Assembly (NCBI GenBank): GCA_030704615.1 | Contig: CM060733.1 | Location: forward strand, 48,298,001-48,362,000 | Source of the DNA: Takakia lepidozioides | Lineage: Eukaryota; Plantae; Bryophyta | Reading direction: 5' to 3' | DNA length: 64,000 bases | Shown: piece after piece, positions 98-64,000 of the stretch | Layout of the letters: every line of letters starts with the position of its first letter | Position numbering within the stretch: the first letter of the stretch is position 1 | The notes under the pieces: generated by a model | The model's input: the letters and a program-made list of their open reading frames with translations, nothing else | Database searches by the model: none | What the model was told of the DNA's origin: nothing | Made by a program: the position numbers and the translations under genes

Positions 98-997
98 GAA
101 CATCCCCAGTTTATGGCATAGGAACAGCTACGATGTCTGATGACGATGATGAAGAGGAATACGAAGGTGATGGTAGTGCATATGACCCAAACTTGGACCC
201 CCACCCAAACTTGGAATCCCCTGAATATGATGGGAGTTTGGGGCCAATTGTACCTACCGAGGAAGAGCGATGTACACTCCGCGAGTGCATACGAAAGGAG
301 CTAAAATCGGAGCTCAAGCAGGCAAACATCATCAGGACTACCTTTAGTGATGATGTGTTCTTCCATATTTGTCTAAATTTTGCTAGAGCTTTAGGCCTGC
401 ATGTTTTTAAACACTTGATGAAATTTGTAACTACATCTAGATCAGATGCATACATAAAGGAAGATACCCATCACTCCAAACGAAAATACTTATATACATT
501 TCTTCCACAGAAGACGTGCCACTCGAGGTGATTGTAATACATGTTTCAGATATCTCAGGGATACCGGAGAATAATTGGGGATGTTCGAGAGGAGATATTG
601 CGCAAGCGTCGGGCTGGGAAGTTGCCCCAAGGCACCACTGCAGTACTGAAGGCCTGGTGGTATGAGCACCGAGAATGGCCTTATCCAACGGTACACGCAC
701 GTATCCAACAGCTAATGTTACACACCTTGTAACTTTGTATTGCATTTACAGTGTATGTTACCATCGTAGGTAGGTAGAACTTCAAAACGCTATGAAGAAG
801 TTGACATTGTCTTGTTGAATTGCTTGATATCTTACTCTCTAATTATAGTGCGCGTACCTAAGCTGCAGGAGGAGCAGAAAGAAGAACTTGTCAAGGAGAC
901 TGGACTGGAACACAAGCAAGTCAACAACTGGTTTATCAACCAGCGGAAACGCAATTGGGAGCGTTTGATGAATATGGACCCGCCATCCTCTTCATAA
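98..997 (+). CDS. Class II KNOX (KNAT3/MKN1-like) TALE homeobox gene, copy A; last three coding exons 98-321, 559-690, 869-997 (5' exons lie outside the window)
   Basis: Spliced translation: [19 protein letters not shown]...[10 protein letters not shown]...[10 protein letters not shown]|[34 protein letters not shown]...WPYPT|[30 protein letters not shown]. This is ELK plus a TALE homeodomain with class II intron positions; the donor at 322 is GC. Confidence 0.93.
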
Positions 998-24674: not shown

Positions 24675-27600
24675 TGTTGAAATAGATTACTGTAGATTAG
24701 TCATAGTCACAGGTGACAGTCCACCAAGTAGTGACACCAAGTAGAGACCTAGTACTGACAGGTGACAGTGCAGTCCATCGAACCGTCACACAGGTGGCAG
24801 TCTCTAAGCAATAGCATTTTGAATTTGTAGTTGGTTAGATCTCCCACTCTCGGCCTGTATTTAGATGCAGATGACAGACCGCGTTTCTTCTTCTCTTTGA
24901 CAGTATGTGTGCGACATACACTATATTGTGTTTGCTATCGATCTCCTTCATTGTCTTTTGAACCTGTCATGGTGTGATTGTATACTTTTCACTATCTCCC
25001 AGTTTTAGATCTTCAATAGGTTATGGGCCCACACAGAGCTTTAGTGTTGCGTGATTAAAGTCTAGCAAAGATGAGTACTAATGAGAACCGAGATCGAGAG
25101 ACGCCAGGGATAGAAAAGTTCACGGGAGAGAGTTTCCATTTATGGAAATTTCAGATGGGATTTATACTCAAGGGTAAGGGGTTGTGGAATATTGTGAATG
25201 GCAAGGAAACAAGGAGTGACGCTGCAGATCAAGAAGACGGGCATAGCAAAGATTGCCGAGCGGTGATGTTGTTGTTCAGTGCAGTAGACAAACATCACAT
25301 GGAGCAATTGTTGAATTAAACCACGTCAGCAGAAATGTGGAACATGCTCAAGAGTGTGCATGAGCAGTTGCAGAAGATAATGTAACTCATCTGTAGGAGA
25401 AATTCTTTAGATGCCAAATGAAAGAGAGTGATTTTATTAGTACGTTTGTGAGTACTATGTTTGCTCTTAGACGTCAGTTGTGCGATCTTGGTGAAGTAGT
25501 AAGCGAGAGACAATTGATGACAAAAATTAAGGTAGGCCTCCCTCCAAGTTATGAGCCTTTCTTACTAGCGTGGGATAGTGTACCCCAAACAGAGCAAACC
25601 TTCCAGGCTTTTCAGGCAAGGTTCTTAAAGCGAGAGTCGTCATTGAAACTGAAGAGCGGGTTGACTGATGTTGAAGGAGATAAAGCGTTCTTTGCAGGAC
25701 GAACAAGTGGGGTAGCTGGTCAGAAGAGAGAATTGTCAACAGAACAAGGAGCAGAGAGAGCTCAAAGACTTATTGATCTCAAGAAGAGAGCTTCCTGTCA
25801 TAACTGTGGTAGGCCTGGACATTGGTCGATGGAGTGTCCATATCCCAAGAAATCAGAAGATAACTGGAGTGGAAAGAGTCAGGCACATATAGTTGAGGCC
25901 GATGCCTTTGTAACTATAAGATGAGATCGTCACTCAAGAGAATCTTCATGGCGAGACAATTGAGAATGAAAGAATTGTCAGTGAAGTCTCATATGTTCAT
26001 ATCAACAATGAGGAAGCATGGTATGCATACATTACAGCTACTCAGCATATGACTGATAAGAAACATTGGTTTCATACAATGAGGAAAATACAACGGGAGT
26101 AAGAGTGGCCAACGATTGCCTAATCTGGGTGGCAGGAGTGGGAGACATAAAGATAATGTCACTTGTCAATGGTTCTTGGCAAAACGGAGTGATAAAGAAG
26201 GCCTTATATGTGCCAGAGCTTTGGAAGAATTTGTTGTCCGTAGGAGAAATGACGGAGAAAGGCATAATAGCGGTGATTGACAAAACGAGTTGCAAACTTT
26301 ACACTAAGAGTGCAGAAGGCAGATTGATGATGACTGGGGTAAAGGAAGGCCAATTGTGGCATATGCTGATCAAAGTTGTACTTCATACATGTGAGGCAAA
26401 TGCTATTGAAAGCAATGATCTGTCACCAGCCGTTTCATCTATGACTCCAAGCTGTAATGCAGATTCTGCTTCTGAAGAAAAATCATCCAAGGCTGTATTG
26501 AATTTATAGCAATGGCATAATCGCCTTGGTCATGTCAGTCTTGATACCATCAAGAAAATAGGGAGAGAAGGGATTGTCATTGGTCTACAAGTGACAATAA
26601 AAGACACAGAGCCTGTGGTTTGCGCTGGGTGGTAAGAACAGTAGAAAGAGTTTTCCAATTCATGAAGAGAGGGAGAGAGTTAAGGAACTTGGGAAATTCT
26701 ATCATGCATACATTGTGGTCCCATGATTGTGTCGTCTCTAGGGGGAGTGTTGGAGTGTCAAGGTTATAGGATTCTTTATTGCATTAAGTCAAAGAGTGAT
26801 GCTTTTGAGTCCTTCCAGAAATGTGAGTTGGCAACGATATAGTTAAGTTCCGGACAGATAGGGGCGGAGAGTTTACAAGCAAAATGTTTAAGGAATATCT
26901 AGCAGAGGCTGGAATTCGTCATGAACTCACGACACCTTATACGCTTGAGCAAAACGGGGTGTCTGAGAGAGATAACCGGACTATTGTTGAGTGTGCTAGA
27001 TCTATGTTGCATGCAAAAGGTTTAGGTCTGCATTTCTGGGGAGAGGCTGTATCCACAGCCGTTTACATTCTGAACCGAGTAGGAACAACTGTTTAGAAAA
27101 AACAGACACCTTTATAAGCATGGTGTGGACGTGTTCCTGATTTGAGTCATCTAAGAGTTTTTGGAAGCCTAGCTTATGTCTATATTCCTAAGGAGCTTCG
27201 CAAAAAGATGGACTCAAAGAGTTTGGTCTGTACGTTTGTTGGATATTGTGCCAAGTCAAAGGCATATAGACTCTGGAGTCAAGACAAAAAGAGAATCATT
27301 ATCAGCCGTGACGTGATATTTGATGAGGGTGACAATCTCATGAGTCTGCCAATTGACGTCGCAAAGGAGGAGACAGATCAGAGCTGTCTTTTTATTCCAT
27401 TAGTCGGAGATTCTACAATATCTCAACCTGCACAATTTGTTGCACTAGTGGAAGACAATCTTGAAGCGGATGGGAGATGTACCACAACCAGTGGGAGTAC
27501 CCCAAGAAATGGGAGATGTGCAAGAAGCAGTGGGAGTTGCAAACCCTATTGCATCAAAGCCCGGAGTTAATATTCATGTTGACCTTGGAATTGATACAGA

Positions 27601-28370
27601 AGAGAATCATAACCAAGGAGCATCTGGTGTTGAAACAATGCTGCAAGAACAACAAACGCGAAGAGCACCACGACACTATGGTGATTGGGCTACAGATAAA
27701 GGGACACACTCTTCATTTGTGTTTCTTACCGAATCTATCATGCAGGTCCATGGTGAACCAGAGACTTATGAAGAAGCTGTTAAATCAGAATATCATGCGG
27801 AATGGACAGCTGCGATGCATGAAGAATACAATTCACTGCTAAAGAATGGCACAAGGAATTTGGTTGACTTACCGCCCAATCGCAAACCTGTCAATGTAAA
27901 TGGGTGTATAAAATCAAACCCAATCAGGATGGATCAATTCAGCTGTTCAAGGCCAGGGTCGTTGCCAAAGGTTTTACGCAAGAGCATGGAATTGATTATA
28001 GTGAGACTTTTGCGCCAGTCGTTAAGTTTGAGTCTATTCGACCTGTCTTGGCCATAGCAGCGGAGGAGGATATGGAGTTGCTACAGTTCGACATTAAGAC
28101 TGCCTTTCTACATGGGGAACTAAATGAAGAGATATACATGATCCAGCCCAAAGGTTTCGAGCATAAAGGAGCTGAGCACAAGGTCTGCAGATTACTAAAG
28201 AGTATCTATGGTCTCAAGCAGGCTTCCCGCCAATGGAACTTCAAGTTGCATCAATTCTTGGTGAAATATGATCTCAAAGCATGTTCAGCAGATCATTGTG
28301 TATATTATAGTCAAACATCACCGAAGCTGTTTGTCACTATCTTCGTTGATGATGGACTAGCAGGGGCATG
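24675..28370 (+). mobile_element. 5' half of a degenerate Ty1/copia element: LTR 24675-25018, PBS, gag, PR, INT, RT truncated after VDDG
   Basis: LTR TGTTGAA...TTCAATA; gag KFTGESFHLWKFQM and zinc knuckle CHNCGRPGHWSMEC; INT EQNGVSERDNRTIVE; RT FKARVVAKGFTQEHGIDYSETFAPVVK and LYG-type IYGLKQASR; many stops and frameshifts. Confidence 0.92.
25019..25030 (+). other. Primer-binding site of the half-tRNA(iMet) type
   Basis: GGTTATGGGCCC immediately after the LTR, as in Drosophila copia, rather than TGGTATCAGAGC. Confidence 0.8.
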
Positions 28371-29997
28371 ACGAGCAATATTACGAGATAGAGCGCTGTA
28401 GGAGCATTGTTGGAATCTAGTTCACGCTTTCGAGTACAACGACCAACCCATGAATCAACACTGAGTGTCCGGTAAACCAGTTGCTGTCGGCTGTGTGAAA
28501 ACGTCACGGAACTGCCAGCCTGAGTCTCGGATACCCGGGGAGCTGACACCAACAACCTCTTCTTACTGGGTTATGTCCTTTGACAAATTTTCCCTTAATG
28601 AGTGTGCCATATTGACTATTTGCAGGGATGGTCAATGAGTACATCCTGGTCCCTTGCTCTGGATTTCTCTTTGAGTCGATTTTAACCTCACAAATCTGAG
28701 GTTAAGTGGGTGGTAGTTTAACACTTAGGACATGATCCGCAGACTACACTCTCTCCTACCCCGTCATTTTTTCTGCCCCTTGAAGATGTGGAAGCCAAGT
28801 GCTTGTGGGACTAGTAAGTGGGATACTGTCATTTAGAATGACTTTATATGCCTGGGAGACAAACTCTTCTGTGCAGAGTAATCCCAGCATTATTTCACGT
28901 GCAGACAATGTCACACAGACAAAGAAACACCGTAACCTGTAGGGTATTAGCTTTGCGTTTGCTCGGAAGTGCAATAACCAGTGTGACAAAATTGGATCAA
29001 AACTGAGCAGTTCCCCTCTTGGGTTGTCCAGTTTTAGGGATGTGGAGACACAGGCAGAGCTCGCAGTGCAAGACAAGACCTCTCTGTTGGAGTGGTGGGT
29101 ACAAGTGTTTTGGGTGCACGCTTGAGTTTGTGACCAACAAATCACAAGAGAAGGCTCCCAAGTTTGCAGAGGGTTTGGAGGTCGAATTGGAGGAAATTTA
29201 CGCTATCAGCTGGACATGAGGACATTTGATGAGCTTTCTGATGAAGAGGGTCGTTTTGAAGACTCAGATTAACTCCAATCTGGAAGCCATCGTCAACAAG
29301 CTCTAGTTACATGTGGGGTTGACTAAGCTGATTTTGTGTCAGGTGCTTCACAAAGACTAGAAAGTAACTACTTGTTACGAAGTTAGACCTGTGTTCAAGT
29401 GGGTTTATCTCTTCAATGACATATCTGGTGGTGGAAATTGTTAGCTTGTGGCCTTTAGTACACACTTTTCTGCTACGGAGTCAGATATGGCAGACTCTGG
29501 AATCAGGTCTCTGTTCTCATCCACGGGAGTTGCTCAATTCAATGCCTCCTCAACACAAGCGATTCACCTCTCTGTTAGTCTGCAGGTAGTGACAGCTGCG
29601 CCTGGGTCTCCGTTTTTTCATGATATCGTTGGACACCGAAAGTTTTGACTAGGTAGCTCAAGGGTAGAAACGGGATTAGGTTTTGGATTGAAGCTTCTTT
29701 TGCTTAATGTATTAAGCCATACATTCTCAAACTCACTCCAGTGCTATGATACGATCCTTACGTTCCTTTGTTGCAAGATTGAAAGTAAATAAAACCATCT
29801 GTGACTAAGGACTCAGCCCTTAGTTGGTCCTTCAGCGGCACAGAGTGTTGAGTGTTGGTATTTGGCAGTGCATTGAGGTTTCTGGTGTTATTAACATGCT
29901 CTTCTGCCTTCCTATGTCTTCGTCGGCACAGACTGAAGTTGCACCCTGATCTGTATAGGACTCGGGTGTTTCTAGATACATATGCAGGCAATGATTG

Positions 29998-41800: not shown

Positions 41801-44800
41801 GCTGTCAGTGAGCAGTGTAATGAAATGAGAGCATTCAGATTAGAGAGAGAGAGAGAATCTTTTGTATATTATAGAGTAACCCTTTTAATAATGTTTTCTC
41901 CTTAGGTTCTATACTAAGGAAGATGACTCTTCATAAGGAAGAGTCACATCTGTTCAGATGTATCAATACGTTGATACCACATGCGAGAGGACTGTTTGAG
42001 TCCATAGATGGACCGGTGTAACTTGCAAGCTCGTTGGAGATCCCCGGCACCTTCAAGGCCATTGGGAATCTGCACATAAATGTCTTCGTCCAATATCCCA
42101 TTAAGGAATACAGTTTTGACATCTAACTGGTGGACATGAAGATCATATTGAGCCGCAAGTGCGAGGATAACCCGAATGGAAGCAATCTTCACCACAGGAG
42201 AGAATGTCTCATGGTAGTCAACCCCGTAGGATTGTGTAAACCCCTTGGCCACTAACCTTGCTTTGTGCGTGCAATGGAGCCGTCGGGATTCATCTTCAGC
42301 TTGTAAACCCATTTGCAGCCTATGGCTTGGTGTCCAGAAGGAAGAGCTGGTCCAAGTATGATTGCGCTCCATAGAGAGAAGCTCATCTTGCATAGCAGCT
42401 TGCCATTGAGGGGCATCGGGTCTGGAAAGGGCTTGCTTGTAAGTTGTGGGCTCAGTGAGGTCAACAGAGTGATTGAAGAAAGCTTGCTTCCTAGGTGTGA
42501 TAGGTCGAGCTAGACTGGATGGGGGGAATAGGGTGTGGTAGTATCCTGATTCTGGTACTTCTTCGAGGGGGAAGAGGAGATGGAGGACGAGAGCTGGGAG
42601 GAGAGGTGGATCCAGTAGCTTGGGTAGTAGAAGTAGGCCGTCTAGAATAACCTGAGGAGGTGTGCTAGGAGGGGTAGGCAAGATGGGAGGAGGTCCTGCT
42701 CCCACTGGAGGTGGAGGGTAGGGTGGTGGAACAACCGTATTAGGATAAGGTTGAAAGAAAGTCAGCTCTTGTTGCAATTCTTCATCTATGAGGCCATCTA
42801 CAGTGAGAGGTTCGGGGTTGACAGGAGATGAAGGAATGTCTTCAAGAAATTGGACGTCACGAGAGATAATGACCCGGCGATCAGACTTGCGCTTGTAAGC
42901 TTTAGAGGATTCACTATATCCTAGGAAGCGGCATTCTGTACTCCTGGGATCTAGCTTAGTACAATTCTGTTCATGGACATGGGCAAAAGCAGTGCAGCCA
43001 AATACTCTCATATGAGATATGTCAGGTTTAGAATTATGCCATAGCTCATAAGGAGTTTTGTCGGGCGGTAAAGCCGCGGTTGGGATACGATTGTTGACGT
43101 AATTGGTTGTAATCATGGCCTCTCCCCAATATGACTTGGAGAGATGAGCATGAAATAAGATAGATCGCACCATCTTCATGAGGGTTTGGTTCATGCCCTC
43201 TGCAACATCATTATGTTGAGGGGTATGAGGAACTGTCAACTGCCTATGTATGCCATGCCGAGCACAGAAGTCGGTAAAGGCTTGAGAAACATATTCTCCT
43301 CCATTGTCAGTACGGAGAACCTGAACTGTTTCTTGACGTTGATTTTCAGCATAGCTTTTCCACTCTTTGAAAGTGTGGAGGGCATGAGACTTCTTGCGTA
43401 ATAAATACACCATAGTGTAACGAGAGTAGTCATCGATTAAAGTCATAAAGTAACGGAAACCGGAATGGGTTGCAGGTGAGAGAGCTCCACAGATGTCTGA
43501 GTGAACCAGACCTAGAATCTTAGTAGCACGACTGGCAGCATCCTTAGGGAAGGGCTTACGATTGTGTTGGCCTTGGATACAAGAAACACAGGGGGAAAGT
43601 TTGTTGAGAATCATAGGGGCAATGCCACGAACCATGTTGCCATTGAACAGTTGGTGAAGTCGAGCTTGGCCAATATGGCCAAGACGTCGATGCCACACTT
43701 CAGCAGGTGTGGCAATAGATGCTGGGATGGCAACAATGGGAGGGGGAGGACAGGACTCACGAAGTTTGTCAAGGTCGTTTACTTGGGAACATTTGGCAAT
43801 ATGCTGACCTTGGGAGTCTGTAAGGGAACAAATTCCCCGGCATAAAAGCATCTCACCATTTGAAGAATCAAGATGTTTGATGGAATAGAGGTTCTTGGTA
43901 AGGCCAGGAACATGATGAACATTAGATATAATGATGGGCTCGCCATGAGGAAGGGTAACGTACACATCTCCTATGCCAACAATAGATTGAGTCGAGTTGT
44001 CTCCTAAATAGACAACTTGAGCAGGATCTAGAGAAGTGTAGGTATGAAAGTGACTCCTATCATGGGCCATGTGGTCTCTGGCACCGGTATCAATGTACCA
44101 ACTAGTATCCCTGGCAGAGTAGGAGACAAAGCTGTGACCAGCAAACGTCTAACACTCTTTCGTCTGTCCAGACTTTGAGCAGCTCTCTTTTCTGCAGCAA
44201 CGCGCTTGCGACAGTCCTTAATAACATGGTTGGTCATCTTGCAGTAAAAGCACTTTAAAGGACGCTTGCCGTTAGAGCTAGGGGGCTGACTGGCAGACAT
44301 GACAGGGGGTACACTCAAGGTAGAAGGTCGACCTCCTCCTTGAGGTTTGAACCCCCGCTTTTGGGTGTACAGTAAAGTGTTCAGGATCATCATGTTTCAT
44401 CATGGTCTCCTCCTGTAGAAGATAAGTGATCAGTTGTGTAATGGTAAGAGCCTGATTTCCTCTTAAGGCTGTTAAGAAATTACGATATGAAGGTGGCATG
44501 CTACGCATCAAAGATATAACAGCCTCCTCATTAGGTACCCTTGAACCAGCAGAGCTAAGTTGATCTAACAAAGCTTGAAAAGCATGAATATTTTTAGTAA
44601 GGCTGCCTCCCTCCTTCAACTTTAGAGTGACAAGCTGATCCTTAAGATACATCTTGGTCATCGTGACTTGCGCTTCATATAGATTGTTAAGTGCTGTCCA
44701 TGCTTCTTGAGCGACGGTAAAAGCAGTAACATGATTTATCTGGCTATTATCCAGGCAATTAAGAAGATAGGATAACGCACTGTTATTCTGGTTATCCCAT

Positions 44801-45764
44801 TCCATCTTGCTGCCAGCGCCAGTAACAGGAGTATGCACAACTGCTCCTCCTAAAGCTGGGATGGGTGTGGCACTGTGCCATCAATAACACCTTGCATTCT
44901 CTCAGCTCTTAGAAATATTAGGAACCTATGTTTCCACACATGGAAATAAGTTCCATCGAATTTGGGAAGGTCAGTGACCTTTAAGCCTGACATCTTCCCA
45001 ACGATCTGTTGACTTCACAATGAAATCAACAGATCTGTTTTAGAACTAATACGAACCTGTCTATGCGGATCTTAAAGTGCTTATGTTTCAAAGCAGCTTA
45101 CTCGAATTATATTTTGTTTTGTTGTGCTTCTGGCAAGCATCTAATAGAGTTTGATATTTCTTTATTTCTGTGCTTCAAACAAGCACCTAAAAAATGAATA
45201 AGTGAGATCCTATGGTTCGAGGCGTCCCCTGTTCCGCAGGAGTCGAGGCGTCCCTCGACTACTGTGGATCCCACTGGACAACTTTAGTTGGCTCTGATAC
45301 CATGTAATGAAATGAGAGCATTCAGATTAGAGAGAATCTTTTGTATATCATAAAGTAACACTTTTTAATAGTGTTTTCTCCTTAGGTTCTATACTAAGGA
45401 AGATGACTCTTCATAAGGAACAGTCACATCTGTTCAGATGTGAAGTGTCACAACTGTAGGGATGATTGCTTCCTAATCTAAATTAGGTCTAACAAGCAGG
45501 AAGTTTTCTGTACTTTGGCAGGGAACTGCAGCGGGAGGCACACTGGAGATTGTTGTCAATGGAACCACAGGTCGTTTGCATCCTGTAGGAAAGGATGGAG
45601 TTAAGCCACTTGCTGCTAACATGAGGGACCTGTTTGAGAACAAATTGTTGAGGACAGGCATGGGAGGAAGTGGGTATCAGAGAGTCAGAGAGTTTTTTAT
45701 GGAACATCACATGTCTGAGAGACTTGGCCTGGTGTTCAAAGAGGTGTTGGCCCGGGGCACTTGA
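38840..45764 (+). CDS. GT4/Glycos_transf_1 glycosyltransferase (At1g75420/At1g19710-like), 489 aa; exons 38840-39173, 39443-39588, 39867-40138, 40385-40539, 41085-41341, 41589-41651, 45522-45764
   Basis: N-terminal TM helix; VLLVSHELSLSGGPLLLMELA, ADLVVLNTAVAGKW, WWIHEMRGHYF, INSVSRGKGQDLF and QNSQARGECFGRITIEAMAFGLPVLGTAAGGT. Phases are consistent (1470 nt). Confidence 0.93.
41816..45494 (-). mobile_element. Internally deleted Ty1/copia element, antisense in GT intron 6
   Basis: 5-bp TSD AGCAG (41811-15, 45495-99); 5' LTR 45303-45494; PBS TGGTATCAGAGC (45291-45302, minus); gag-PR-INT-RT order with frameshifts. RT is fused directly to a truncated 3' LTR (41816-41961); RNase H and PPT are missing. 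Confidence 0.95.
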
Positions 45765-50314: not shown

Positions 50315-52627
50315 CTAATCATTCTTTCTATCAATCTTCACTGAGGGCATCGATGAAGAGAACCACCGGTCTTGCACCCAAGAAGGTGCATAGTGTAGCC
50401 ACCAGTATACATGAGAGAGATAGCCAAAGGTGAAGTAAGATGGGACCCGACTTGAGGTTATAGCTGCAACTGCCTTCTTGGCAAATTCATCAGTGGGTGT
50501 AGCCTTCGGATTCTTAGATACACCTGCAACCCGCTTGATCAGTGCCCCTTCGTAAGGCTTGTACAATTTGAGGGCCGAATCGGCAACATAGCCAGTCACA
50601 ACATTGCGGGCCTTCATACCGAATCCAGAAACAATGACCCCAGGGACAATGACGATGACATCGATCCCAAAAGGCTTCACCTCCTGCCTGACAAGTTGGG
50701 ATCCAAATCAAATGCTCAGATTGTACCACTGGAGTTGATCCTATAGAACCATTCAGCAAAGCCACCACCTACCTTTGTCTCTAGAGTTTCCTTTTGTGCT
50801 GGCATACACACTACTACGCACGTGATCTTCATTTCATAGACTATCCTAAGTAGCCCTGCATGGTTGAATGCAGACCTGAAATTTTAAAACTTGTGTTGTT
50901 TGAAATACAATAGCAGGGGATAGAGAGCCAGCCAGAGAAATGACAAATGCTAGCTACGTAGACATCTTAAGAGGGTCATCTCATTAACAAGCTATAGGAG
51001 TGGAGACTGCAAGCATTCTACTTCGCACACCCAGCATGCTGAACTCATGATTTTTCTCGAGTGGCTGTAGCACTTGACATTCTTTTGATCTATATGTACC
51101 TTCTGAAACTGTCCATAATTCGTCTCTGTATTATCCGGTCACTTGAGAGCAATTGTATGTCTACTAACCCAACGACTAGTATTGTCCATGGCTACCTAGT
51201 ATTCAAATTCGAAACGGCAAGAATGAGGCTGTATACAATGTCTTGCAATTCTGATCTCGCGGAATCAGGAAAGAGAACACGTACGTAATAATCCCTCACC
51301 CCTCTGAATTACTCTGCTGAGCCACTGGGACTTCCTGTGTATGAATTGCTGAGCACCCCTTTCTGTTTGACTGATACCTTCATGCTCTCTTTAATGCCAT
51401 TGCTGCCTTTAAAAAATCTCTCTCCCTGTCCTATGGGCCCTCGTGGCCTTACATCATGAAGTTTCTTTATTCCTTTCTTTCTTGCTTTCTCTTGTCCCAT
51501 AAGCTCTTTGAGCTTTTCGAGGACATTATGTCATTCTTTTCATTTCTCTAGCTGTCTCTCTCTCTATATTCCCAGTGGAAGGAGGGGAAAGAAGGATCTG
51601 GTGTTATACACTACATGCTGTTGTTGGAGTCGGTGGTGAATATTATGGAATTATGGACTGGTTTTCTTTAGACTTCTTCTTACACTTAAAGATACTTACC
51701 GAAGCGCATCACTCAGAGCATGAAAAGCTGCTTTCGAGCTGGCGTAGATGCCACCCCACGGACCCGCGACACATGCAGAAATGCTGCCTACATTGGCAAT
51801 TACACCCTTCCCTCGTGCAGCCATGTGTGGCACAACTGCTTGAATTAACAAAAGTGGACCTGCAAAATCCATCATTTCATCCAGGGCTTCAAACTATTCA
51901 GTACATGAAAACCAGCACACATAAGAATATGCATTGAGCTCATGCAGACGAGCTTCTCTTCTTCCGCCACAGTGGATGACAGTCGGCATTTTGTGGGCGT
52001 GGGCGAGATGATGGAGTTTTCTCCAAATCATCGATATGAATTCAGAGACTTCCAAGCATATAAGTTGCTCAAGTTCATTGCTCTCAGATTTGAGTTCACA
52101 ACAGGGTGGGATTGAACCCAAGCAGTGAACTGTGACATTTACCAGACCAATTGTGAATAGATATTGCAACATTCCATTTGTTACTGGTCAGGCGGATTCT
52201 TCATGAAAATTGCAGAACTAGATTTCACGCGTTACCGTGCAACAGAAGTGAATTTCAAAACCAAGTTCATACCAAAAAGATTGGTCTGGAAGGTCCTCTC
52301 CACAAGGGAGGAATGGGTCTCAACAATAGGATCCAAGGCAGGAACGCCAGCGTTGTTGACCAAAATATCAATGTGGTCGTACTTTGCCATGACGCTGTCC
52401 ACCGCATCGCGAATGGTAGCCTCGACAGTGACATCAATAGCAAGGGTTTCAACATACGGATGTTCCTGCAGCTTTTTCATGGTGTCCAACGACCTCGATG
52501 TGGCCACAACACTGTAGCCCGCGTCACTAAATGCCAAGGCAAGACTAGTGCCTATACCGCCATCCGAGCAGCCCGTGATGAGAACTACTTCATCTCGCCT
52601 CCCGGTTGCTCCAGGTCCACCCCCCAT
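50315..52627 (-). CDS. Short-chain dehydrogenase/reductase (Ayr1/At5g10050-like), 295 aa; exons 52627-52273, 51859-51700, 50687-50315
   Basis: [25 protein letters not shown], catalytic YASSK and [12 protein letters not shown]. Introns are GT-AG and in frame (888 nt). Confidence 0.93.
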
Positions 52628-53519: not shown

Positions 53520-55790
53520 ATGCAGACTGACTGGGTCGACAACGAGCTTCGGGAAGAAATAGACTGGGAAACTGAGAAACAGAAAGAAAAAATTGTAGCA
53601 CACTCCTTATATCCAGACCTGATGGCAGCCCATGTGGCTTGTCAACGGGTCGTGACACCTATGGATCAGACCCCATACCTTGACTGGCAGTTGGCGCAGG
53701 CTCAAGCTGAAGCAACCAATAAGTATTGTGTTGTGTACCGTGATGAGCTCGATACCAGCCCAGAAGAGAAGGCGGAGCTTGATGAATTCATGGTAAGGAA
53801 CCCCTAATAAATAGAAGATGGGATTCCAGTACCTAGATCAGTCGCCAAGGTTCCATTTATGGGAGAGTAGGCTTTAGAGTCAGTCACCTACTGGAAAGCT
53901 CAACAGTGTTCTTTCCTTGAAAACTACAAAGTCATATATATGTGGCATGAACTATATGATAGAGCCTACGTGTACCTCAAAGGGCAAGTATCCACAAGAG
54001 GACCAGGCTTAATATTATTTAGGCCAACTTTGCGGTCAGGGTCATCTTTTCTTAGTGTGTACATGGCATCATATGGCCGAGATTTAATGCTACTGAAGAG
54101 CTAAGCGACGATTCAATTCTCGGTACATCTATTCCAGGTGTACAGAGCATCTGACTCTGTTCTTGGCCGAGCTGCTATCTAGATGGACAACTTCATTTCA
54201 GATTCTTGCTTGTTAGCATACATTGACATCTGTCTTTATGCTGCAAATGGCGCTGCTCCTAGATAGGTTGATTTATGAAGCACTTGTCGTTTGGATTTTG
54301 GATTTTGCAGGTCCACGATATTATGCTAATCACTGCCTACAAGGATCAGCTGCAGCAACGTCTTAACGGGGCTGTGAGAGAAGCTATGATGTTCTGCTGG
54401 AACACAGAGCAGGAACTCTACAAACTGACAGGTAAGGAGAACTTGGTGCATGTATGTGTTAGTACGTACTGCAAGATAGGGTAGCCGCGGATTGGAGACA
54501 CCTGATCCAGGAAATTCAGCTCAAGCCATTGTACTTCCTTTAGCCTAGCTAGAGGATGTTAAAGGGTCTAACGCCCGAGCTGCGTTGCCTGGTTTATATA
54601 AGTTGTACAGAGGTAACTAATTTGGAAGGGCACTATGAACGTCCAGTTATCTGCAAGTTTAAATACTTGGCTGCTCTTATTACAACTGTTCTTGGAAATG
54701 TACTTACCCTTGGAAATTAACAATGCGTGGACTCTGCAGGAGCATCCCCTGTTTATGGCAAAGGAGCAGCTACTGTGTCTGATAAAGGTGAAAAATTCAA
54801 GGGCAAATTCAGTGCAGGTGACCCAAACTTGGATTATACTAGGGGTTTCGGGCCAGTACAGCGACCTACTGAGACAGACCATTATACAAACGTGGAACGC
54901 TTACGTCAGGAGCTCATGCCCGACCTCAAGGAGGCAAGCACTCATGATTCTGCCTTCACTTTCTTAATGATAGACCTCATACTTGTCTGAACCTTGCTAG
55001 TGCTGTAGCTAGCTAGCTTGCGAGTTTAATTCTATCACCAACCATTACAGTTTTGAGCAGTGTCTTAATACAAACAAACTGAGTGCTCAATTTCGATGCT
55101 CTGAAGATGTTAAGCAATCTGTGGAGCAAGCTTTCGGGTAGCATGCTAAAGATTTTGATCATGATGTTAGCTCGATCGATGGTTGTTGACCTCTCTTGCC
55201 TGATTGCTGCAGCCATATATTGTGGATGGTGTACTGTAGTAGAAAACGCGTACACATGCATAGAAGACTTGTGGGCCACTGGAAGTGATTGTAGTACAAA
55301 TTTCACAAGTCATGTGCAGGCATACAGGAAAAACTCTTTGCGATTCGAGAGGAGATATTGCGCACGGGACGGGTTGGTGAATTGCCGGAAGGCTCCACGA
55401 CCGTATTGAGGGCCTGGTGGCGTGCGCACATCGAATGGCCTTATCCCACGGTAAACACGCCCGTATCCAACCAGATAATGAGCCAGCGAGTATACAGACT
55501 TCTAATGTAACTTCGTATTGCATTTGTATACTTTACCATCCTAGATCATCACAATATGAAAAACGAGTCATCATTTTGTTGGATTACTTGTATGTACCTT
55601 AATATAATTGTTGTACGCCTGTATCTAAGCTGCAGGAGGACGAGAAGGAGAGGTTCAGCCGACAGACAGGGCTGCCACTGAAGTTGGTGAACAACTGGTT
55701 CATCAACCAACGGAAACGAAACTGGCACGGTATTAATCATCATTTCGCGGCATCCTCTTCAGAACGAATCACAAAACAAAAGCTCAGCTG
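53520..55790 (+). CDS. Divergent class II KNOX copy B; exons 53520-53792, 54311-54431, 54740-54933, 55320 (or 55328)-55450, 55636-55790 (or unspliced to the stop at 55974); frameshifted if the ancestral acceptor is used
   Basis: KNOX1 ([20 protein letters not shown]), KNOX2 (ELDEFM...[18 protein letters not shown]), ELK ([13 protein letters not shown]), HD ([24 protein letters not shown]). Exon 4 is 131 nt versus 132 nt in copy A. Functional status is uncertain. Confidence 0.85.
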
Positions 55791-57120
55791 GTACGTGAGA
55801 GTACCCAATTTCTCTGATAGGAAACGGTTCTCGACCTATATGTCTCTCGAAGGCCAATTCAATCCATCACAGAACTCACGATCGTCCACAAATACAGACG
55901 ATCGTTCAGTCCAGAAACTCTTAACCATATTTTCAAGACAGATTTCAAAACCAGTCCCAGAAGCTTTTGACTAGCTATCCCTCCATATCTGCAAGTGTCA
56001 ATGGATCAGGCCATCTCCATATCCGACTGCACTATAGAATAGTGGCAGCCAAAGAGGCTAGCGGATATCAAGTTTGGGGCCTTAACTCTACATTTAAGTA
56101 GAAGTCTTGACCGTTCCAGACATTGGTTTGTTTGGGGCCCGCATTTTCCCCTTGTTCGGCTCAATGGCTCAGGCAGTTTGTAGGGAATTCAGATTCCTTG
56201 AAACATGAGCGAGAGAAGTTCTCTCGAGAGAGACTATTAAGTACTGCAAATTAAAGCATTTGTAAACTCAGATAGGCCAAACCAAGGATGGCATGATGTG
56301 ATAACATTGCATGCATTGCTCCTGCATGCATGCAGTAGCATTATCTGGATTCAAACAAGGGGCCGCATGGAACTATTAGAGAGGCTAGATAAGATAGGTA
56401 ACACAACGAAGAGTCTAAAGCCTTATAGGTACTCCAAAGAAGTTTTTCCCTCTTTTGGTCACGTTTGGGCTTACTAACTTCTGCTTCTGTTTTTTTTTGT
56501 AGTGAATTTCACGTGGAGTCTGGCCTCGGGTCTGCTGGGCCGAGTAACTTACAGCCCATGGCTACCGCTAATTGGCCGAGCTCCAGTTATAGTTACAATC
56601 TGCGCCCGGAAGAACAGTGGCCACAGGACTTCAATTGATTAAATATCATCATAAGAGGTATACAGTTCGTCCAATCTTAACCAAGCATCTTAAGCAGACT
56701 CTATTACCGAGAAAGTTGCCAAGAAAGACTTTGCCCGGTGACCAAACCAAATTCACTTCACTTTTGTAGTAACATTGATCATAACTGTTGTAGATTTCAG
56801 TGTAACTACACTAAGAGTACCTGCATGCCTAGAATATGACTCAGGCTAACTAAATAGGTTGGAAGTTCATGCATACCCCGGGATGGGAGGATTTACCTCT
56901 TCAGTGGACTTGAATAAGTACCGGGACTAGATTTTGGACTTGTGCCCATTGTGACTAGTAACAGCATATCTCCATGGAGTTTGATCCTAGAATGAACATC
57001 AACAGATCACTCGTTATATTGGGCGAAATGACCTACATAGAATCACACTCTCCACTGCAGTGTTCCGCTAGTTGTCAGCTGTGAGCGGTAATCAAATGCT
57101 GAGCAAATGCTCGGGGAAAG

Positions 57121-60868: not shown

Positions 60869-63800
60869 CAGCGTAGCTACGGCGTGAGCCCAGCCCCGTG
60901 AGCCTGGGAGCTGAGCTCACGTTCAAGCTTTGAAGCGTGAGCTGAGCTCACGCTTCAGGGAAGCGTGAGCGGCATGAATCTGCTGGAGAAGCAGGTCCTA
61001 TAGGCGAGGATTGCAGGAAGAGGGCCTATTACCGTGGACAAAACAAAGGAGGCCACCATGCACCATGTCTGCAATGCGTGCCAAAAAAGAGGAATATGTA
61101 AACATGTCAGATTTGAGCTCAGAATGATTGACACAGTTTATTTCAATTCACAGAGAGACGCTTACAATGAATCGCAAGTGCATTTGCCCTCACAAGTGAA
61201 CGAAATGTATATGTTTGTCATAAAATGAAAAGTCTTCACACGGCAACCTGGAAACCAGCATGGGAAGCGGGCATGGCTCGTATGTGTTCAAAGAGAAGTT
61301 GGCGGAGCTCTACGCGAGGTGTCCCGCTGCAGAAGGGTGATGACTTCTCCGTAGCCTAGTGTGGCTTGGTGAATGAATTGGTCTCTCTTACCGTCGCAAC
61401 ACATAATTACAAGGTATATGTAATATTGATGCTTGCAGGGGACCCACTTCCCTCTCATGCCGAGAGCGCCCTCACGCATCGTTACAAAATCCGGACAAGT
61501 GCACGATGGGAAATTCCCAATGGTAACTTGATATTCTTTGGCATGAAGAACTGAGCCAATTGACAGCACTGTGTAAATCCGTCCATACCCCGGGGAAGGG
61601 ACTTCGGTGATACGAGCCACCGTAGCCTGCAAAATTCTAGCCGATTCCATCTTGCATTCGTGATCTGCACCCGAAGCAACACGGCGCACTGTTTTTCCAT
61701 CTCTTTTTGTTGGGTGGGAGTTGGCACCGGGTGGAGGCATTGTCGGAGCATGTGGCACATCTGTGCCGACAGTGCATAAGGGCACCACCCGGGACCGTGC
61801 AAGACAAAACCCTCCCTCCTCCAGCATGCTTATCTCGGTTGAGGACAGCGATGTCCCAATTTGCACAGGCCAAATTGCGGGGGGAGGGGGCTTCATTATC
61901 ACGGAAGGACGAACTGTTCCCTTCACGCATCGTGCCATATCGTCTGGGCAGAACCAAAACTTGTGCTCTTTTGACTCCCCACTATGATAAGGTCGGAACA
62001 ACCCTGTGAATGTTGGAGCTGGAGTCCCCCTGGAGCCTTTGCATATTTTTGATTTGCATTTCTTGAAAGAGGGGGTCCGAATTGCCATGCAAGCCACTCT
62101 AGATCCTGGTGGGGTGCGTTCTATATGCCAGTCACTATCAATGCAATCAGATTCCTGCACCATGGCCACCACCTCCTCCAATGGGATTTCCGCTGCTATG
62201 CTTGCATGTTCCGCACCTGCTCCACAGGAGGAGGACCCACCTGGGAAGGGGCCGGCACAGGACTTAGTCTGCACTGGAGACACCTTTGGCACAGAGAAAT
62301 TGACCCTGTCTGGCCTATGGGAATCTCCATCTGACCCTGGAAGAGTGTTTAATTTCCTTTTGCATGATCCAAATCTTTCCTCGCCTTCCAAATGGGGAGC
62401 CTGGATTGCAGAGGGGAACCTTCAGTGCACCTGTTTAGAGCTCTGGCCATCTTTGACGGGTCTCCGGACCTACTCGCAGCCCTTAGCATCAACAAAGTCG
62501 AATCGGGGCCCTTCCCTCCACCCCGTCCCATCAGAAAATTGCGGTACCTGGTTTGTTGTGTAAGTGCCCGCACCATGTCATCAGCAGTGGCCACATACAA
62601 GTCACGACCTGCTTTGGTAGACTGTTGCATCCAGGCGTTGTGAACAGTCTCTGCCAAATTACACGATGGCATGTCGGCCAAGTCCTCCAAGGACATGTCC
62701 TGCAGGAGGCATTGCATGGAAATGTGAGGAAGGAAAAGAAATGGTAGAGGTTATTCAAGTGACAATCGAACAACCCCAAATGAACAGGCACGATGCAAAG
62801 TGCAATTTGTGTTTAAGGAAAACTTGTGAGGCTTACCGTCGTCATGAAAGCTCCCCACTGTCTGTACCTGAAGTGCCAGAAAACCAACCAGTCCTCCAAC
62901 TCCTTCAGGTGGATACCTGTAGCAGCACCAGCGGAGAACCACCAAGCCCGGATTGCCTGGTAAGTGCTCTCTGCTTCTCCCATTGAGGTGGCATTCTTGT
63001 ACTTCAGACAGAGCCTTCTATGCTCCAACTGAAGGTCAGGGCGAATGCAGCGCTTTGTATGACGTGCCAGAGATTGACTCCAATGGAAGAGGCATGTGCG
63101 CTCCCTATTTTCCATGGGGACCTTAGGATCCCCAGAACCAAACACGCGCCGCACTGCATTGAAATTTGCCTGTGCACTATCAGCCATGAAGCCCGCAAAG
63201 TTTGTGTTCTGTATTCCATTGCGCTGCATGACGGTCAGGAGGGACTTCCACATGAGCATCTGGGATTCAGTGTCCTCCGACTGCATATCACAAATTGCTA
63301 TGGAGAGCACACGCTGGTACGCTGGATCATACACATGGACACGCCATGGTTGTCCAACCCTTCACCCGTTTGCAGTGATCAAACATTAACCAACATTTAG
63401 CCAAATCTCCTCCAGGTTGCATTCGGCGGACAATGCTCACACCACTGCCTTGGCCCACAGCGGACATCTTGAACAAATACACTTTGGACGAGCCCTGGCC
63501 AGGGAACATACTGTTTTGAATGAATTCATAGCGACTCCTCCGTTTGAGGTCCATAATGTTGTCCATGAATCCAGCAGTGCCTGTGCCCATTCTGAGTGCA
63601 TTCACCTGGTTTCGAATATTGGGAGAGCTCAACACGGAGAAATGGTCCATGACTGCCTCAAGGGAATCTGCATCCAGCATTGGCTGTGTCGAATCCCCTT
63701 CACCCAGTATGTGTTTTTCCAGGAATGCCTTGCTAGCTGCAAGCGCTATAGCAGAAGGTGTTGCAGAAGGGGCATTATGGAACTCTTGCTTCAGTAGATT

Positions 63801-64000
63801 TCTAGCGATGTCCACGCTATCCCTGCAACTCCCTTTGGACACAGGATGCTCGTGTGCACCCATATGAATGCAGGCACGAGTCATTGTCTTGCATCGATGT
63901 GCCACCTGATACATACGAGCGTGGCAAACAGAAACACAGGACGGGGAAAGTTTGCAGAACCTGCACACAAAAGTATTGGTATTGGGAGGTGCAAGCCCTG
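60869..64000 (-). mobile_element. Mutator-like (MULE) element with an intron-containing DDE transposase and SWIM finger (coding 61288 to >64000), frameshifted
   Basis: FDHCKRVKGWTTMA, FMADSAQANFNAV, CLFHW (CxxH), NLAETVHNAW and SWIM CTCPDF...CKHQYY. Intron ~62700-62836; frameshifts at ~63340 and ~62395; GC-rich CGTGAGC terminal repeats at 60880-60970. Confidence 0.78.

What the first reader, a model, noticed from the sequence alone, without database searches (positions are those of the whole stretch)
55311..55450. KNOX-B: one missing base both frameshifts the homeodomain exon and creates an in-frame rescue acceptor
Seen: the exon starts gtgCAG|gcataCAG|gaaaaactc. The ancestral acceptor (55320) gives a 131-nt exon (132 in copy A) reading AYRKNSLRF...PY*, a 225-aa KNOX1-KNOX2-partial ELK protein with no homeodomain. 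The lesion is most simply TAC AAG GAA AAA (YKEK, as in KNAT3 GYKEK) losing one A. That creates a second CAG 8 nt downstream; its use (55328, 123 nt) restores the frame ([12 protein letters not shown]...WPYPT) at a cost of 3 codons. Known: homeodomain-less KNOX proteins (KNATM/PETROSELINUM) sequester BELL partners. Inference: this could be an independent class II origin of such a decoy, switchable by tandem 3' splice-site choice. A simple pseudogene or an assembly indel are real alternatives, and the early stop could trigger NMD if the donor at 55791 is used.
Basis: partly seen in the sequence, partly recalled or inferred. Interest (0 to 1): 0.8.

Follow-up and report, generated by a model that had tools for sequence, protein, structure and literature searches.

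The report
Frameshifted class II KNOX gene copy
One of two neighbouring copies of a moss developmental regulator gene (class II KNOX) lacks a single base in its homeodomain exon. The nearby "rescue" splice site is an old feature of these genes, not a product of the deletion, and the copy looks more like a decaying duplicate than a newly evolved decoy-and-switch gene.

Summary
The sequence facts hold. KNOX-B exon 4 (55320-55450) is 131 nt. It is 132 nt in copy A, in Physcomitrium mRNA, in a moss gene on JGI contigs, and in all 80 KNOX2 loci sampled from metagenome contigs. From the conserved acceptor, reading stops at TGA 55407-09, giving a 225-aa MEINOX-only protein. From the CAG at 55325-27 the homeodomain frame is restored, three codons shorter.

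The deletion did not create that CAG. Moss KNOX2 exon 4 normally starts GGA TAC AGA (Gly-Tyr-Arg), so TACAG is ancestral. The missing base lies just after it, within 55327-55334.

In-frame AGs near an acceptor are common by chance, and five stop-free ones exist here.

B is the most divergent KNOX2 seen: 47 of 143 near-invariant residues are changed, evenly across the MEINOX and homeodomain parts. The DNA-recognition helix is untouched, so the homeodomain was translated for most of B's history.

This argues against an established decoy. It fits a recent lesion in a relaxed duplicate, an assembly error, or splice rescue.

No orthologue or transcript-derived protein of B was found. An earlier scan note reports a separate homeodomain-less class I KNOX gene in this genome.

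The parts
53520..53792 (+). KNOX-B exon 1 (ATG at 53520, in-frame TGA 9 nt upstream). It holds the KNOX1 domain and lacks the ~240-aa N-terminal region of other moss KNOX2 proteins.
   Evidence: Pfam PF03790 E=5.1e-14. tblastn of full-length moss KNOX2 proteins finds no N-terminal homology upstream. 8 of 30 near-invariant positions changed.
54311..54431 (+). KNOX-B exon 2 (121 nt, ends in phase 1); KNOX2 domain.
   Evidence: Pfam PF03791 E=1.3e-7. AG|...|GT boundaries. 8 of 23 near-invariant positions changed.
54740..54933 (+). KNOX-B exon 3 (194 nt, ends in phase 0): linker plus the first half of ELK. It is followed by a GC donor (54934-35, GAG|gcaagc).
   Evidence: Copy A has the same GC donor (CAG|gcaaac at 322-323). 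The JGI moss gene has GT here. 12 of 30 near-invariant positions changed.
55320..55450 (+). KNOX-B exon 4 from the conserved acceptor (AG 55318-19): 131 nt instead of the invariant 132. It holds the ELK end, the homeodomain N-arm, helix 1 and the WPYP loop.
55325..55327 (+). CAG inside the ancestral Tyr-Arg codons (TAC AGR). If used as an acceptor, the exon starts at 55328 (123 nt) and the frame is restored with 3 codons lost.
   Evidence: TACAGA stands at the same place in Physcomitrium mRNA and in JGI moss contigs L003-5, L010, L012, L016, L017.
55327..55334 (+). Zone where the base is missing. It is either the third base of the Arg codon or a base of the A run 55329-33.
   Evidence: Gap-placement scan against copy A: minimum mismatches at 55330/55333, a near-flat plateau over 55325-55346. 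Comparison with moss and GYREKL-type exon starts.
55407..55409 (+). Premature TGA reached from the conserved acceptor, 41 nt before the exon 4/5 junction.
55636..55974 (+). KNOX-B exon 5: homeodomain helices 2-3 (recognition helix intact) plus tail. TAC at 55792-94 aligns with the TAA stop of Physcomitrium, so the ORF runs 61 codons further to TAG 55972-74. A possible donor lies at 55791.
   Evidence: Pfam PF05920 E=4e-9.
98..321 (+). Copy A exon 3. The 5' part of gene A lies outside the window.
559..690 (+). Copy A exon 4: 132 nt, reading [23 protein letters not shown]...WPYPT.
869..997 (+). Copy A exon 5 with TAA stop 995-997. That stop sits at a codon that is GAA in B and in Physcomitrium.
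55451..55545 (+). Start of intron 4, 82-93% identical between copies A and B, which is more conserved than the exons.

Best explanation
KNOX-B is a fast-evolving tandem paralogue (about 54 kb downstream, same strand) of a class II KNOX gene in a moss. After a long period as an intact homeodomain gene under relaxed constraint, it lost one base just after the ancestral Tyr-Arg codons at the start of exon 4.

Splicing at the conserved acceptor (55320) then gives an mRNA that stops after 29 out-of-frame codons. That mRNA would encode a 225-aa MEINOX-only protein with a long 3' UTR, which probably exposes it to nonsense-mediated decay (inferred).

The CAG 8 nt downstream is an inherited codon feature that happens to fall in frame. 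It may yield a minor frame-restoring isoform, as is common after indels in plants. Nothing indicates that it, or the truncated product, has been selected. In short, the copy is a duplicate at an early stage of loss, not an evolved decoy or switch.

Shown: gene structure, exon lengths, ancestry of the CAG, elevated and evenly spread divergence, intact recognition helix.
Inferred: the deletion is real, which acceptor dominates, and the fate of the mRNA.
For: Exon 4 is 131 nt here and 132 nt everywhere else. TACAG is ancestral in mosses.

B has 47 of 143 near-invariant KNOX2 positions changed, against 12/88 for copy A and 9-21/147 for other moss KNOX2 proteins. The changes are spread evenly over exons 1-5: 8/30, 8/23, 12/30, 9/29, 10/31. 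The relative-rate test gives 22-27 B-unique against 11-12 A-unique changes, depending on outgroup (chi2 3.7-6.7).

Other signs of relaxation: 3 of 5 basic residues of the homeodomain N-arm are lost and the acidic linker stretch is replaced; there is no N-terminal region; the codon aligned with the Physcomitrium stop is TAC.

The lesion must be young relative to the duplication. It is the only frame-breaking defect in five exons, and all splice sites are intact. The recognition helix has 0 of 14 residues changed against 15 of 66 in the whole homeodomain (P=0.017), with 5 synonymous and 0 non-synonymous A-B differences there. A neutrally drifting 91-codon homeodomain would stay free of stops with P=0.27 at 0.1 and 0.03 at 0.5 substitutions per site.

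The upstream acceptor is still a perfect CAG|G. The only branch-point-like motif (TTCAC, A at 55305) lies 14 nt before it and 22 nt before the second AG. Frame-restoring isoforms after indels are common in rice but mostly of low abundance (PMC8893660).
Against: No read evidence, so the missing base could be an assembly error.

A single lesion in an otherwise open 290-codon gene is also what constitutive splice rescue or a consensus error would leave behind.

The dN/dS estimate is ambiguous. It is 0.25 for the homeodomain using synonymous sites (pS 0.56), but close to 1 if intron 4 (23% divergence) is taken as the neutral yardstick.

No orthologue was available to date the lesion or to measure constraint on the B lineage alone.
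Confidence: 0.45

Rival explanations
1. Assembly or consensus error: the real gene has a 132-nt exon 4 (for example A6 instead of A5 at 55329-33, or AGR GAA instead of AGGAA), and KNOX-B is an intact, fast-evolving class II KNOX gene.
For: It is the only frame-breaking defect in five exons with intact splice sites. The homeodomain frame is open and its recognition helix is perfectly kept. One candidate position is a homopolymer run, which is prone to consensus error.
Against: A5/A6 is a short run that polished assemblies usually get right. B shows several other signs of relaxed constraint, so a real lesion is not surprising. No direct evidence either way.
Confidence: 0.17
2. Real deletion, functionally rescued: the +8 CAG (exon start 55328) is the main acceptor, and B makes a homeodomain protein with an ELK region three residues shorter (349 aa if exon 5 is read to 55974).
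For: CAG|G context; frame restored with no stop. The homeodomain is open and helix 3 conserved. Losing 3 residues is close to one helical turn of the ELK helix (inference). Such organism-level rescue is documented in rice (PMC8893660).
Against: The upstream AG is intact, in an equally good CAG|G context, and comes first after the candidate branch point. The same +8 CAG exists in normal moss KNOX2 genes, where using it would be frame-breaking. The Physcomitrium transcript contigs L006 and L007 both encode the full 534-aa protein, which requires the conserved junction (checked at base level in L006). The rice study finds frame-restoring isoforms mostly of low abundance. There is no sign of adaptation such as a weakened first AG.
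Confidence: 0.2
3. One reading: B is a newly evolved class II source of a MEINOX-only BELL decoy (KNATM-like), with regulated choice between the two acceptors giving decoy or homeodomain protein.
For: The conserved acceptor gives a KNOX1+KNOX2 protein without a homeodomain. Homeodomain-less KNOX proteins are thought to sequester BELL partners in angiosperms and liverworts (PMC8476127; PMC4617109). The stop lies only 41 nt before the last known junction, so junction-dependent decay might be avoided (inference).
Against: The MEINOX part, which a decoy needs, is as degraded as the homeodomain (16/53 against 19/60 near-invariant positions). This includes HPLY->HSLY, CLR->CQR and DQLP->DQTP. The rescue CAG is ancestral and expected fairly often by chance. 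No orthologue with the same architecture was found. There is no expression evidence.
Confidence: 0.1
4. Programmed -1 ribosomal frameshifting on G_AAA_AAC (55328-34) restores a 44-codon exon reading during translation.
For: A -1 slip there would read AYRKN then [10 protein letters not shown], matching the length of copy A exactly (reading).
Against: The heptamer is not canonical, since its first base is G. The 96 nt downstream fold no better than shuffles (z = -0.41). From my own knowledge, programmed -1 frameshifting is little documented for plant nuclear cellular genes; I did not check this in the literature.
Confidence: 0.01

Closest known systems
Class II KNOX (KNOX2) TALE homeodomain genes: Arabidopsis KNAT3/4/5/7, the Physcomitrium and Ceratodon KNOX2 genes (P0154, P0345, P0006, P0151)
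   Same: KNOX1, KNOX2, ELK and TALE homeodomain exons occur in the same order with the same intron positions. The best database hits are KNOX2 proteins. Two adjacently numbered KNOX2 genes also occur in Ceratodon (locus tags M758_3G077700/800).
   Different: Exon 4 is one base short. About a third of near-invariant residues are changed. There is no long N-terminal region. Intron 3 has a GC donor. The basic N-arm and the acidic linker are degraded.
Homeodomain-less KNOX proteins: KNATM/PETROSELINUM (eudicots) and MpKNOX1A/B (liverworts)
   Same: The product from the conserved acceptor would be MEINOX-only, like these proposed BELL-sequestering proteins (PMC8476127; PMC4617109).
   Different: The Marchantia HD-less genes are KNOX1-related (PMC8476127), and KNATM forms a clade of its own restricted to eudicots (PMC4617109). 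Each is described as a lineage-wide gene family. B is class II and keeps open, conserved homeodomain exons. Its MEINOX part is degraded, and no orthologue shares the truncation.
Frame-restoring splice isoforms after non-3n indels (rice CRISPR study, PMC8893660) and tandem alternative 3' splice sites
   Same: A non-3n indel lies next to an alternative AG whose use restores the frame.
   Different: Here usage is only predicted. The study finds such isoforms frequent but mostly of low abundance and rarely rescuing.
Young duplicated (non-processed) pseudogene
   Same: A tandem duplicate with an accelerated rate, a frameshift, and a changed codon where Physcomitrium has its stop.
   Different: There is only one frame-breaking lesion, all splice sites are intact, and the recognition helix is perfectly kept. 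If it is a pseudogene, it is a very recent one.

Membership tests
Class II KNOX (KNOX2) genes | KNOX1 and KNOX2 (MEINOX) domains | tested here: met
   PF03790 E=5.1e-14 and PF03791 E=1.3e-7, both above the gathering scores.
Class II KNOX (KNOX2) genes | ELK plus TALE homeodomain (WPYP loop, [10 protein letters not shown] helix) in one reading frame with MEINOX | tested here: not met
   With the conserved acceptor the frame breaks and stops at 55407-09. It is continuous only from the +8 acceptor. The homeodomain sequence itself is present (PF05920 E=4e-9).
Class II KNOX (KNOX2) genes | Conserved exon structure: a 44-codon (132-nt) exon 4 bounded by phase-0 introns | tested here: not met
   The intron positions are the same, but the exon is 131 nt. 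It is 132 nt in copy A, L003-5, L006 and 80/80 sampled loci.
Class II KNOX (KNOX2) genes | Closest relatives are class II rather than class I proteins | tested here: met
Exon 4 aligns with the GY[KR]..I.D[VI]REEILR type.
Homeodomain-less KNOX decoys (KNATM/PTS, MpKNOX1A/B) | Gene structure that ends before ELK/homeodomain | tested here: not met
   Both homeodomain exons are present, open and recognisable downstream of the stop.
Homeodomain-less KNOX decoys (KNATM/PTS, MpKNOX1A/B) | Truncated architecture conserved in other species | tested here: inconclusive
   No orthologue of B was found at all. The best exon-1 hit is 52% identical. Metagenome scans and an exon-5 search found none.
Homeodomain-less KNOX decoys (KNATM/PTS, MpKNOX1A/B) | MEINOX kept under constraint while the homeodomain is dispensable | tested here: not met
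   The same fraction of near-invariant positions is changed in exons 1-2 (16/53) and exons 4-5 (19/60). Helix 3 is intact.
Homeodomain-less KNOX decoys (KNATM/PTS, MpKNOX1A/B) | Binds and sequesters BELL partners; is expressed | not testable with these tools
   This needs RNA and protein assays.
Tandem alternative 3' splice sites | Two competent AGs a few nucleotides apart | tested here: met
   CAG|G at 55317-20 and CAG|G at 55325-28.
Tandem alternative 3' splice sites | Both junctions observed in RNA | not testable with these tools
No transcript-derived protein of B is in the collections.
Duplicated pseudogene | Disabling lesion plus relaxed constraint | tested here: inconclusive
   A frameshift is present in the assembly, the rate is about 2.2 times that of copy A, and 33% of near-invariant sites are changed. 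But there is only one frame-breaking lesion and a conserved recognition helix.

The most novel reading that the evidence does not exclude
KNOX-B is a transcribed class II KNOX gene that makes two products from one pre-mRNA. The conserved acceptor gives a MEINOX-only protein that ties up BELL partners, and the inherited +8 CAG gives a homeodomain protein. The ratio is set by tissue or life-cycle generation. That would be the first class II, and the first splice-switchable, homeodomain-less KNOX.
Probability: 0.07. Interest if true: 0.7.

Novelty: new member of a known kind. Interest (0 to 1): 0.3.

Why it matters
Class II KNOX genes help control the haploid-to-diploid body-plan switch in land plants, and homeodomain-less KNOX proteins are thought to damp KNOX/BELL activity. 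A class II gene caught turning into such a decoy, with a splice switch, would show how these inhibitors arise.

The evidence here points instead to an ordinary outcome of tandem duplication: a relaxed copy that has just acquired, or only appears to have, a one-base deletion. The useful results are three.
- The 132-nt exon is invariant across land-plant KNOX2 genes.
- The 'rescue' CAG is an ancestral Tyr-Arg codon feature of moss KNOX2.
- The case can be settled by a handful of DNA and RNA reads.

Tried and rejected

2. Exact look-up of ten genomic ORFs around the site, meant to find independent assemblies, found none in the collection.

3. A profile search with B and A exon pieces aligned to moss KNOX2 proteins (A4) was swamped by canonical KNOX2 proteins. 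A divergent B-like protein would rank below the 120 listed, so that result is uninformative about B. A first alignment (A3) misaligned the pieces and was discarded.

4. The B-only searches were as follows.
- Exon 1 against 1.84 billion representatives: best hit 52% identical.
- Exon 1 and an exon-4 alignment against metagenome contigs: no B-like locus, best 69%.
- Exon 5 word search: only generic homeodomain fragments.

5. ENA contig L001 and Logan contig L002, which carry the best exon-1 hits, do not reach exon 4. The Ceratodon locus was not on record.

6. dN/dS was left ambiguous, because synonymous divergence (pS 0.56) and intron-4 divergence (0.23) disagree.

7. Ribosomal frameshifting was rejected for lack of a downstream structure.

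8. A weak KNOX-like tblastn hit at 62855-63286 (-) is a transposase-like ORF, not a third KNOX gene.

Full report
**What is there**

The window holds two class II KNOX (KNOX2) gene copies on the + strand.

Copy A sits at the window start. Only its exons 3-5 are inside the window: 98-321, 559-690 and 869-997.

Copy B lies about 54 kb downstream and has five exons:
- 53520-53792 (KNOX1 domain, Pfam E=5.1e-14)
- 54311-54431 (KNOX2 domain, E=1.3e-7)
- 54740-54933
- 55320-55450
- 55636 onward (Homeobox_KN, E=4e-9)

Introns 3 and 4 of the two copies still align, with intron 4 at 77% identity over aligned columns. Neither intron matches the corresponding gene region of another moss (L003). So A and B are fairly recent tandem duplicates.

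Earlier notes of this scan call the genome an early-branching moss. I did not verify the species, but the nearest full-length relatives of B are Ceratodon and Physcomitrium KNOX2 proteins.

**Checking the observation**

- The exon 4 start reads gtgCAG|GCATACAG|GAAAAACTC.
- The exon from 55320 is 131 nt, against 132 nt in copy A.
- From 55320 it reads AYRKNSLRF...PY and stops at TGA 55407-09. With the 196 codons of exons 1-3 that gives 225 aa.
- From 55328 it reads [12 protein letters not shown]...WPYPT, in frame with exon 5.

The deficit is unique to B. Exon 4 has 44 intact codons in Physcomitrium mRNA (L006) and in a moss gene on three JGI contigs (L003-5). It also does in all 80 KNOX2 loci fetched from metagenome contigs: 67 genomic AG|132 nt|GT and 13 spliced.

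**Where the base is missing, and the origin of the CAG**

The outgroups say otherwise. Physcomitrium and three distinct moss exon-4 sequences in the JGI contigs start exon 4 with GGN TAC AGA GCR ARR ATY (G-Y-R-A-K/R-I). Copy A has TAC CGG. So Tyr-Arg, and with it the string TACAG, is ancestral, and B simply kept it.

The missing base lies just after it. One possibility is the third base of the Arg codon: TAC AGR GAA AAA CTC, reading YREKL, a pattern found in several plant loci (L040, L074, L084). The other is a base of the A run: AGG AAA AAR CTC. Both cost fewer substitutions than the YKEK model: 5 or 6 against 7 relative to the moss consensus, and 6 to 8 against 8 relative to copy A.

The paralogue alone cannot fix the position. 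Mismatch counts are nearly flat over 55325-55346.

It follows that normal moss KNOX2 genes carry the same CAG 8 nt inside exon 4, where using it would break the frame. The Physcomitrium transcript contigs L006 and L007 both encode the full 534-aa protein, which requires the conserved junction; I checked the junction at base level in L006.

**Is the in-frame acceptor more than chance?**

Hardly. Among all AG or CAG sites of this window:
- 17-20% have another AG in the rescuing phase within 8 nt.
- 3% have a CAG there.
- 41-46% have an AG in phase within +-14 nt.

Around this acceptor there are five stop-free in-frame alternatives: 55295, 55310, 55328, 55352 and 55355. There are also three frame-compensating alternative donors for exon 3. 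Exon-4 skipping is in frame as well, because exon 3 ends and exon 5 starts in phase 0.

**How B has evolved**

I aligned B against 186 full-length KNOX2 proteins. B differs at 47 of 143 near-invariant positions. Copy A differs at 12 of 88, and other moss KNOX2 proteins at 9-21 of 147.

The changes are spread evenly:

| Exon | Near-invariant positions changed |
|---|---|
| 1 | 8/30 |
| 2 | 8/23 |
| 3 | 12/30 |
| 4 | 9/29 |
| 5 | 10/31 |

The MEINOX part (16/53) is therefore no better kept than the homeodomain part (19/60). Motifs that are near-invariant (kept in at least 95% of the 186 proteins) are hit: HPLY->HSLY, CLR->CQR and DQLP->DQTP.

A relative-rate test over exons 3-5 gives 22-27 B-unique against 11-12 A-unique replacements, depending on the outgroup (chi2 3.7-6.7). 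B has also lost 3 of 5 basic residues of the homeodomain N-arm and the acidic linker stretch. It has no counterpart of the ~240-aa N-terminal region. It has TAC where Physcomitrium has its TAA stop, which extends the ORF by 61 codons.

Against long-standing decay:
- The frameshift is the only frame-breaking lesion.
- All splice sites are intact.
- The recognition helix [14 protein letters not shown] is untouched. That is 0 of 14 residues changed against 15 of 66 in the whole homeodomain (P=0.017). The A-B differences there are 5 synonymous and 0 non-synonymous.

In a simple simulation, a neutrally drifting homeodomain would stay stop-free with P=0.27 at 0.1 and P=0.03 at 0.5 substitutions per site. 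So the homeodomain was translated for most of B's history. Either the lesion is recent, or it is not real, or it is bypassed.

The pairwise dN/dS is ambiguous. It is 0.25 with synonymous sites (pS 0.56), but close to 1 if intron 4 divergence (0.23) is the neutral yardstick.

An established KNATM-like decoy should have three things: a conserved MEINOX part, a dispensable or decayed homeodomain, and relatives that share the architecture. None of these is seen.

Known homeodomain-less KNOX genes differ from B. The Marchantia ones are KNOX1-related (PMC8476127). KNATM forms its own eudicot-restricted clade (PMC4617109). Each is described as a lineage-wide gene family rather than a single locus.

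No orthologue of B, and no transcript-derived or annotated protein of B, turned up. The best exon-1 hit among 1.84 billion representatives is 52% identical. Exact ORF look-ups were blank. The metagenome scans and the exon-5 search found nothing B-like.

The splice switch is mechanistically possible, because both sites are CAG|G. But the first AG is intact and comes first after the only branch-point-like motif. That motif, TTCAC with its A at 55305, lies 14 nt before the first AG and 22 nt before the second. In rice, frame-restoring isoforms after indels are common but usually of low abundance and seldom rescuing (PMC8893660).

From the conserved acceptor, the stop lies 41 nt before the exon 4/5 junction and leaves a 3' UTR of more than 380 nt. 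By general knowledge of plant nonsense-mediated decay, a long 3' UTR tends to trigger decay. This is an inference.

**What could not be done**

The decisive test is DNA reads over the site and RNA junction counts. 

Exons were searched one by one by reference.

**Verdict**

| Reading | Probability |
|---|---|
| Recent real deletion in a relaxed tandem duplicate, with at most a minor frame-restoring isoform | 0.45 |
| Constitutive splice rescue | 0.20 |
| Assembly error | 0.17 |
| Regulated decoy/switch | 0.10 |
| Ribosomal frameshifting (no supporting structure) | about 0.01 |

Noticed in passing
window 54934-54935 and 322-323: Intron 3 of both KNOX copies has a GC donor (GAG|gcaagc, CAG|gcaaac), while the JGI moss KNOX2 gene has GT at the same place. 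A liverwort (Calypogeia) annotation, P0036, reads through into the intron at this very junction, which may mean a non-GT donor there too.
   Followed up: partly
window 55270-55300 and 55451-55545 (copy A 505-535 and 691-770): Intronic blocks flanking exon 4 are 80-93% identical between copies A and B. That is more conserved than the exons (about 73%) and far more than the first 27 nt of exon 4 (43%). Possible causes are splicing-control elements or a gene-conversion tract. They do not match the corresponding gene region of another moss (L003).
   Followed up: partly
window 995-997 and 55792-55794: The C-terminal ends differ. Copy A has TAA at a codon that is GAA in B and Physcomitrium, an early stop. 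B has TAC where Physcomitrium has its TAA stop, which adds 61 codons.
   Followed up: partly
Copy A may therefore have a large insertion in intron 2, or be 5'-truncated.
   Followed up: no
window 41944-44838 (-), 25418-28371 (+), 61288-63968 (-): Long ORFs with retrotransposon-polyprotein-like or transposase-like translations lie between and beyond the two KNOX copies; I judged this from the translations and did not run a family scan. The ORF at 62813-63334 (-) gave spurious weak hits to KNOX queries.
   Followed up: partly
P0006 / P0151 (Ceratodon purpureus M758_3G077800 / M758_3G077700): Ceratodon has two KNOX2 genes with consecutive locus tags, 73% identical and sharing GYKSKIEDV. This looks like an independent tandem duplication of KNOX2 in another moss.
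   Followed up: no
L001 6001-6351 (ENA contig ctg131246): A KNOX1-domain ORF with a short N-terminus, 51-52% identical to B exon 1, has no detectable KNOX2, ELK or homeodomain exons within 6 kb downstream. It may be a solitary MEINOX fragment or a gene with very long introns.
   Followed up: partly
window 52232-52627 (-): A 131-aa ORF whose translation resembles a short-chain dehydrogenase/reductase exon lies just upstream of KNOX-B; I did not check this with a family scan. It appears to be the only other ordinary host gene piece near the locus.
   Followed up: no
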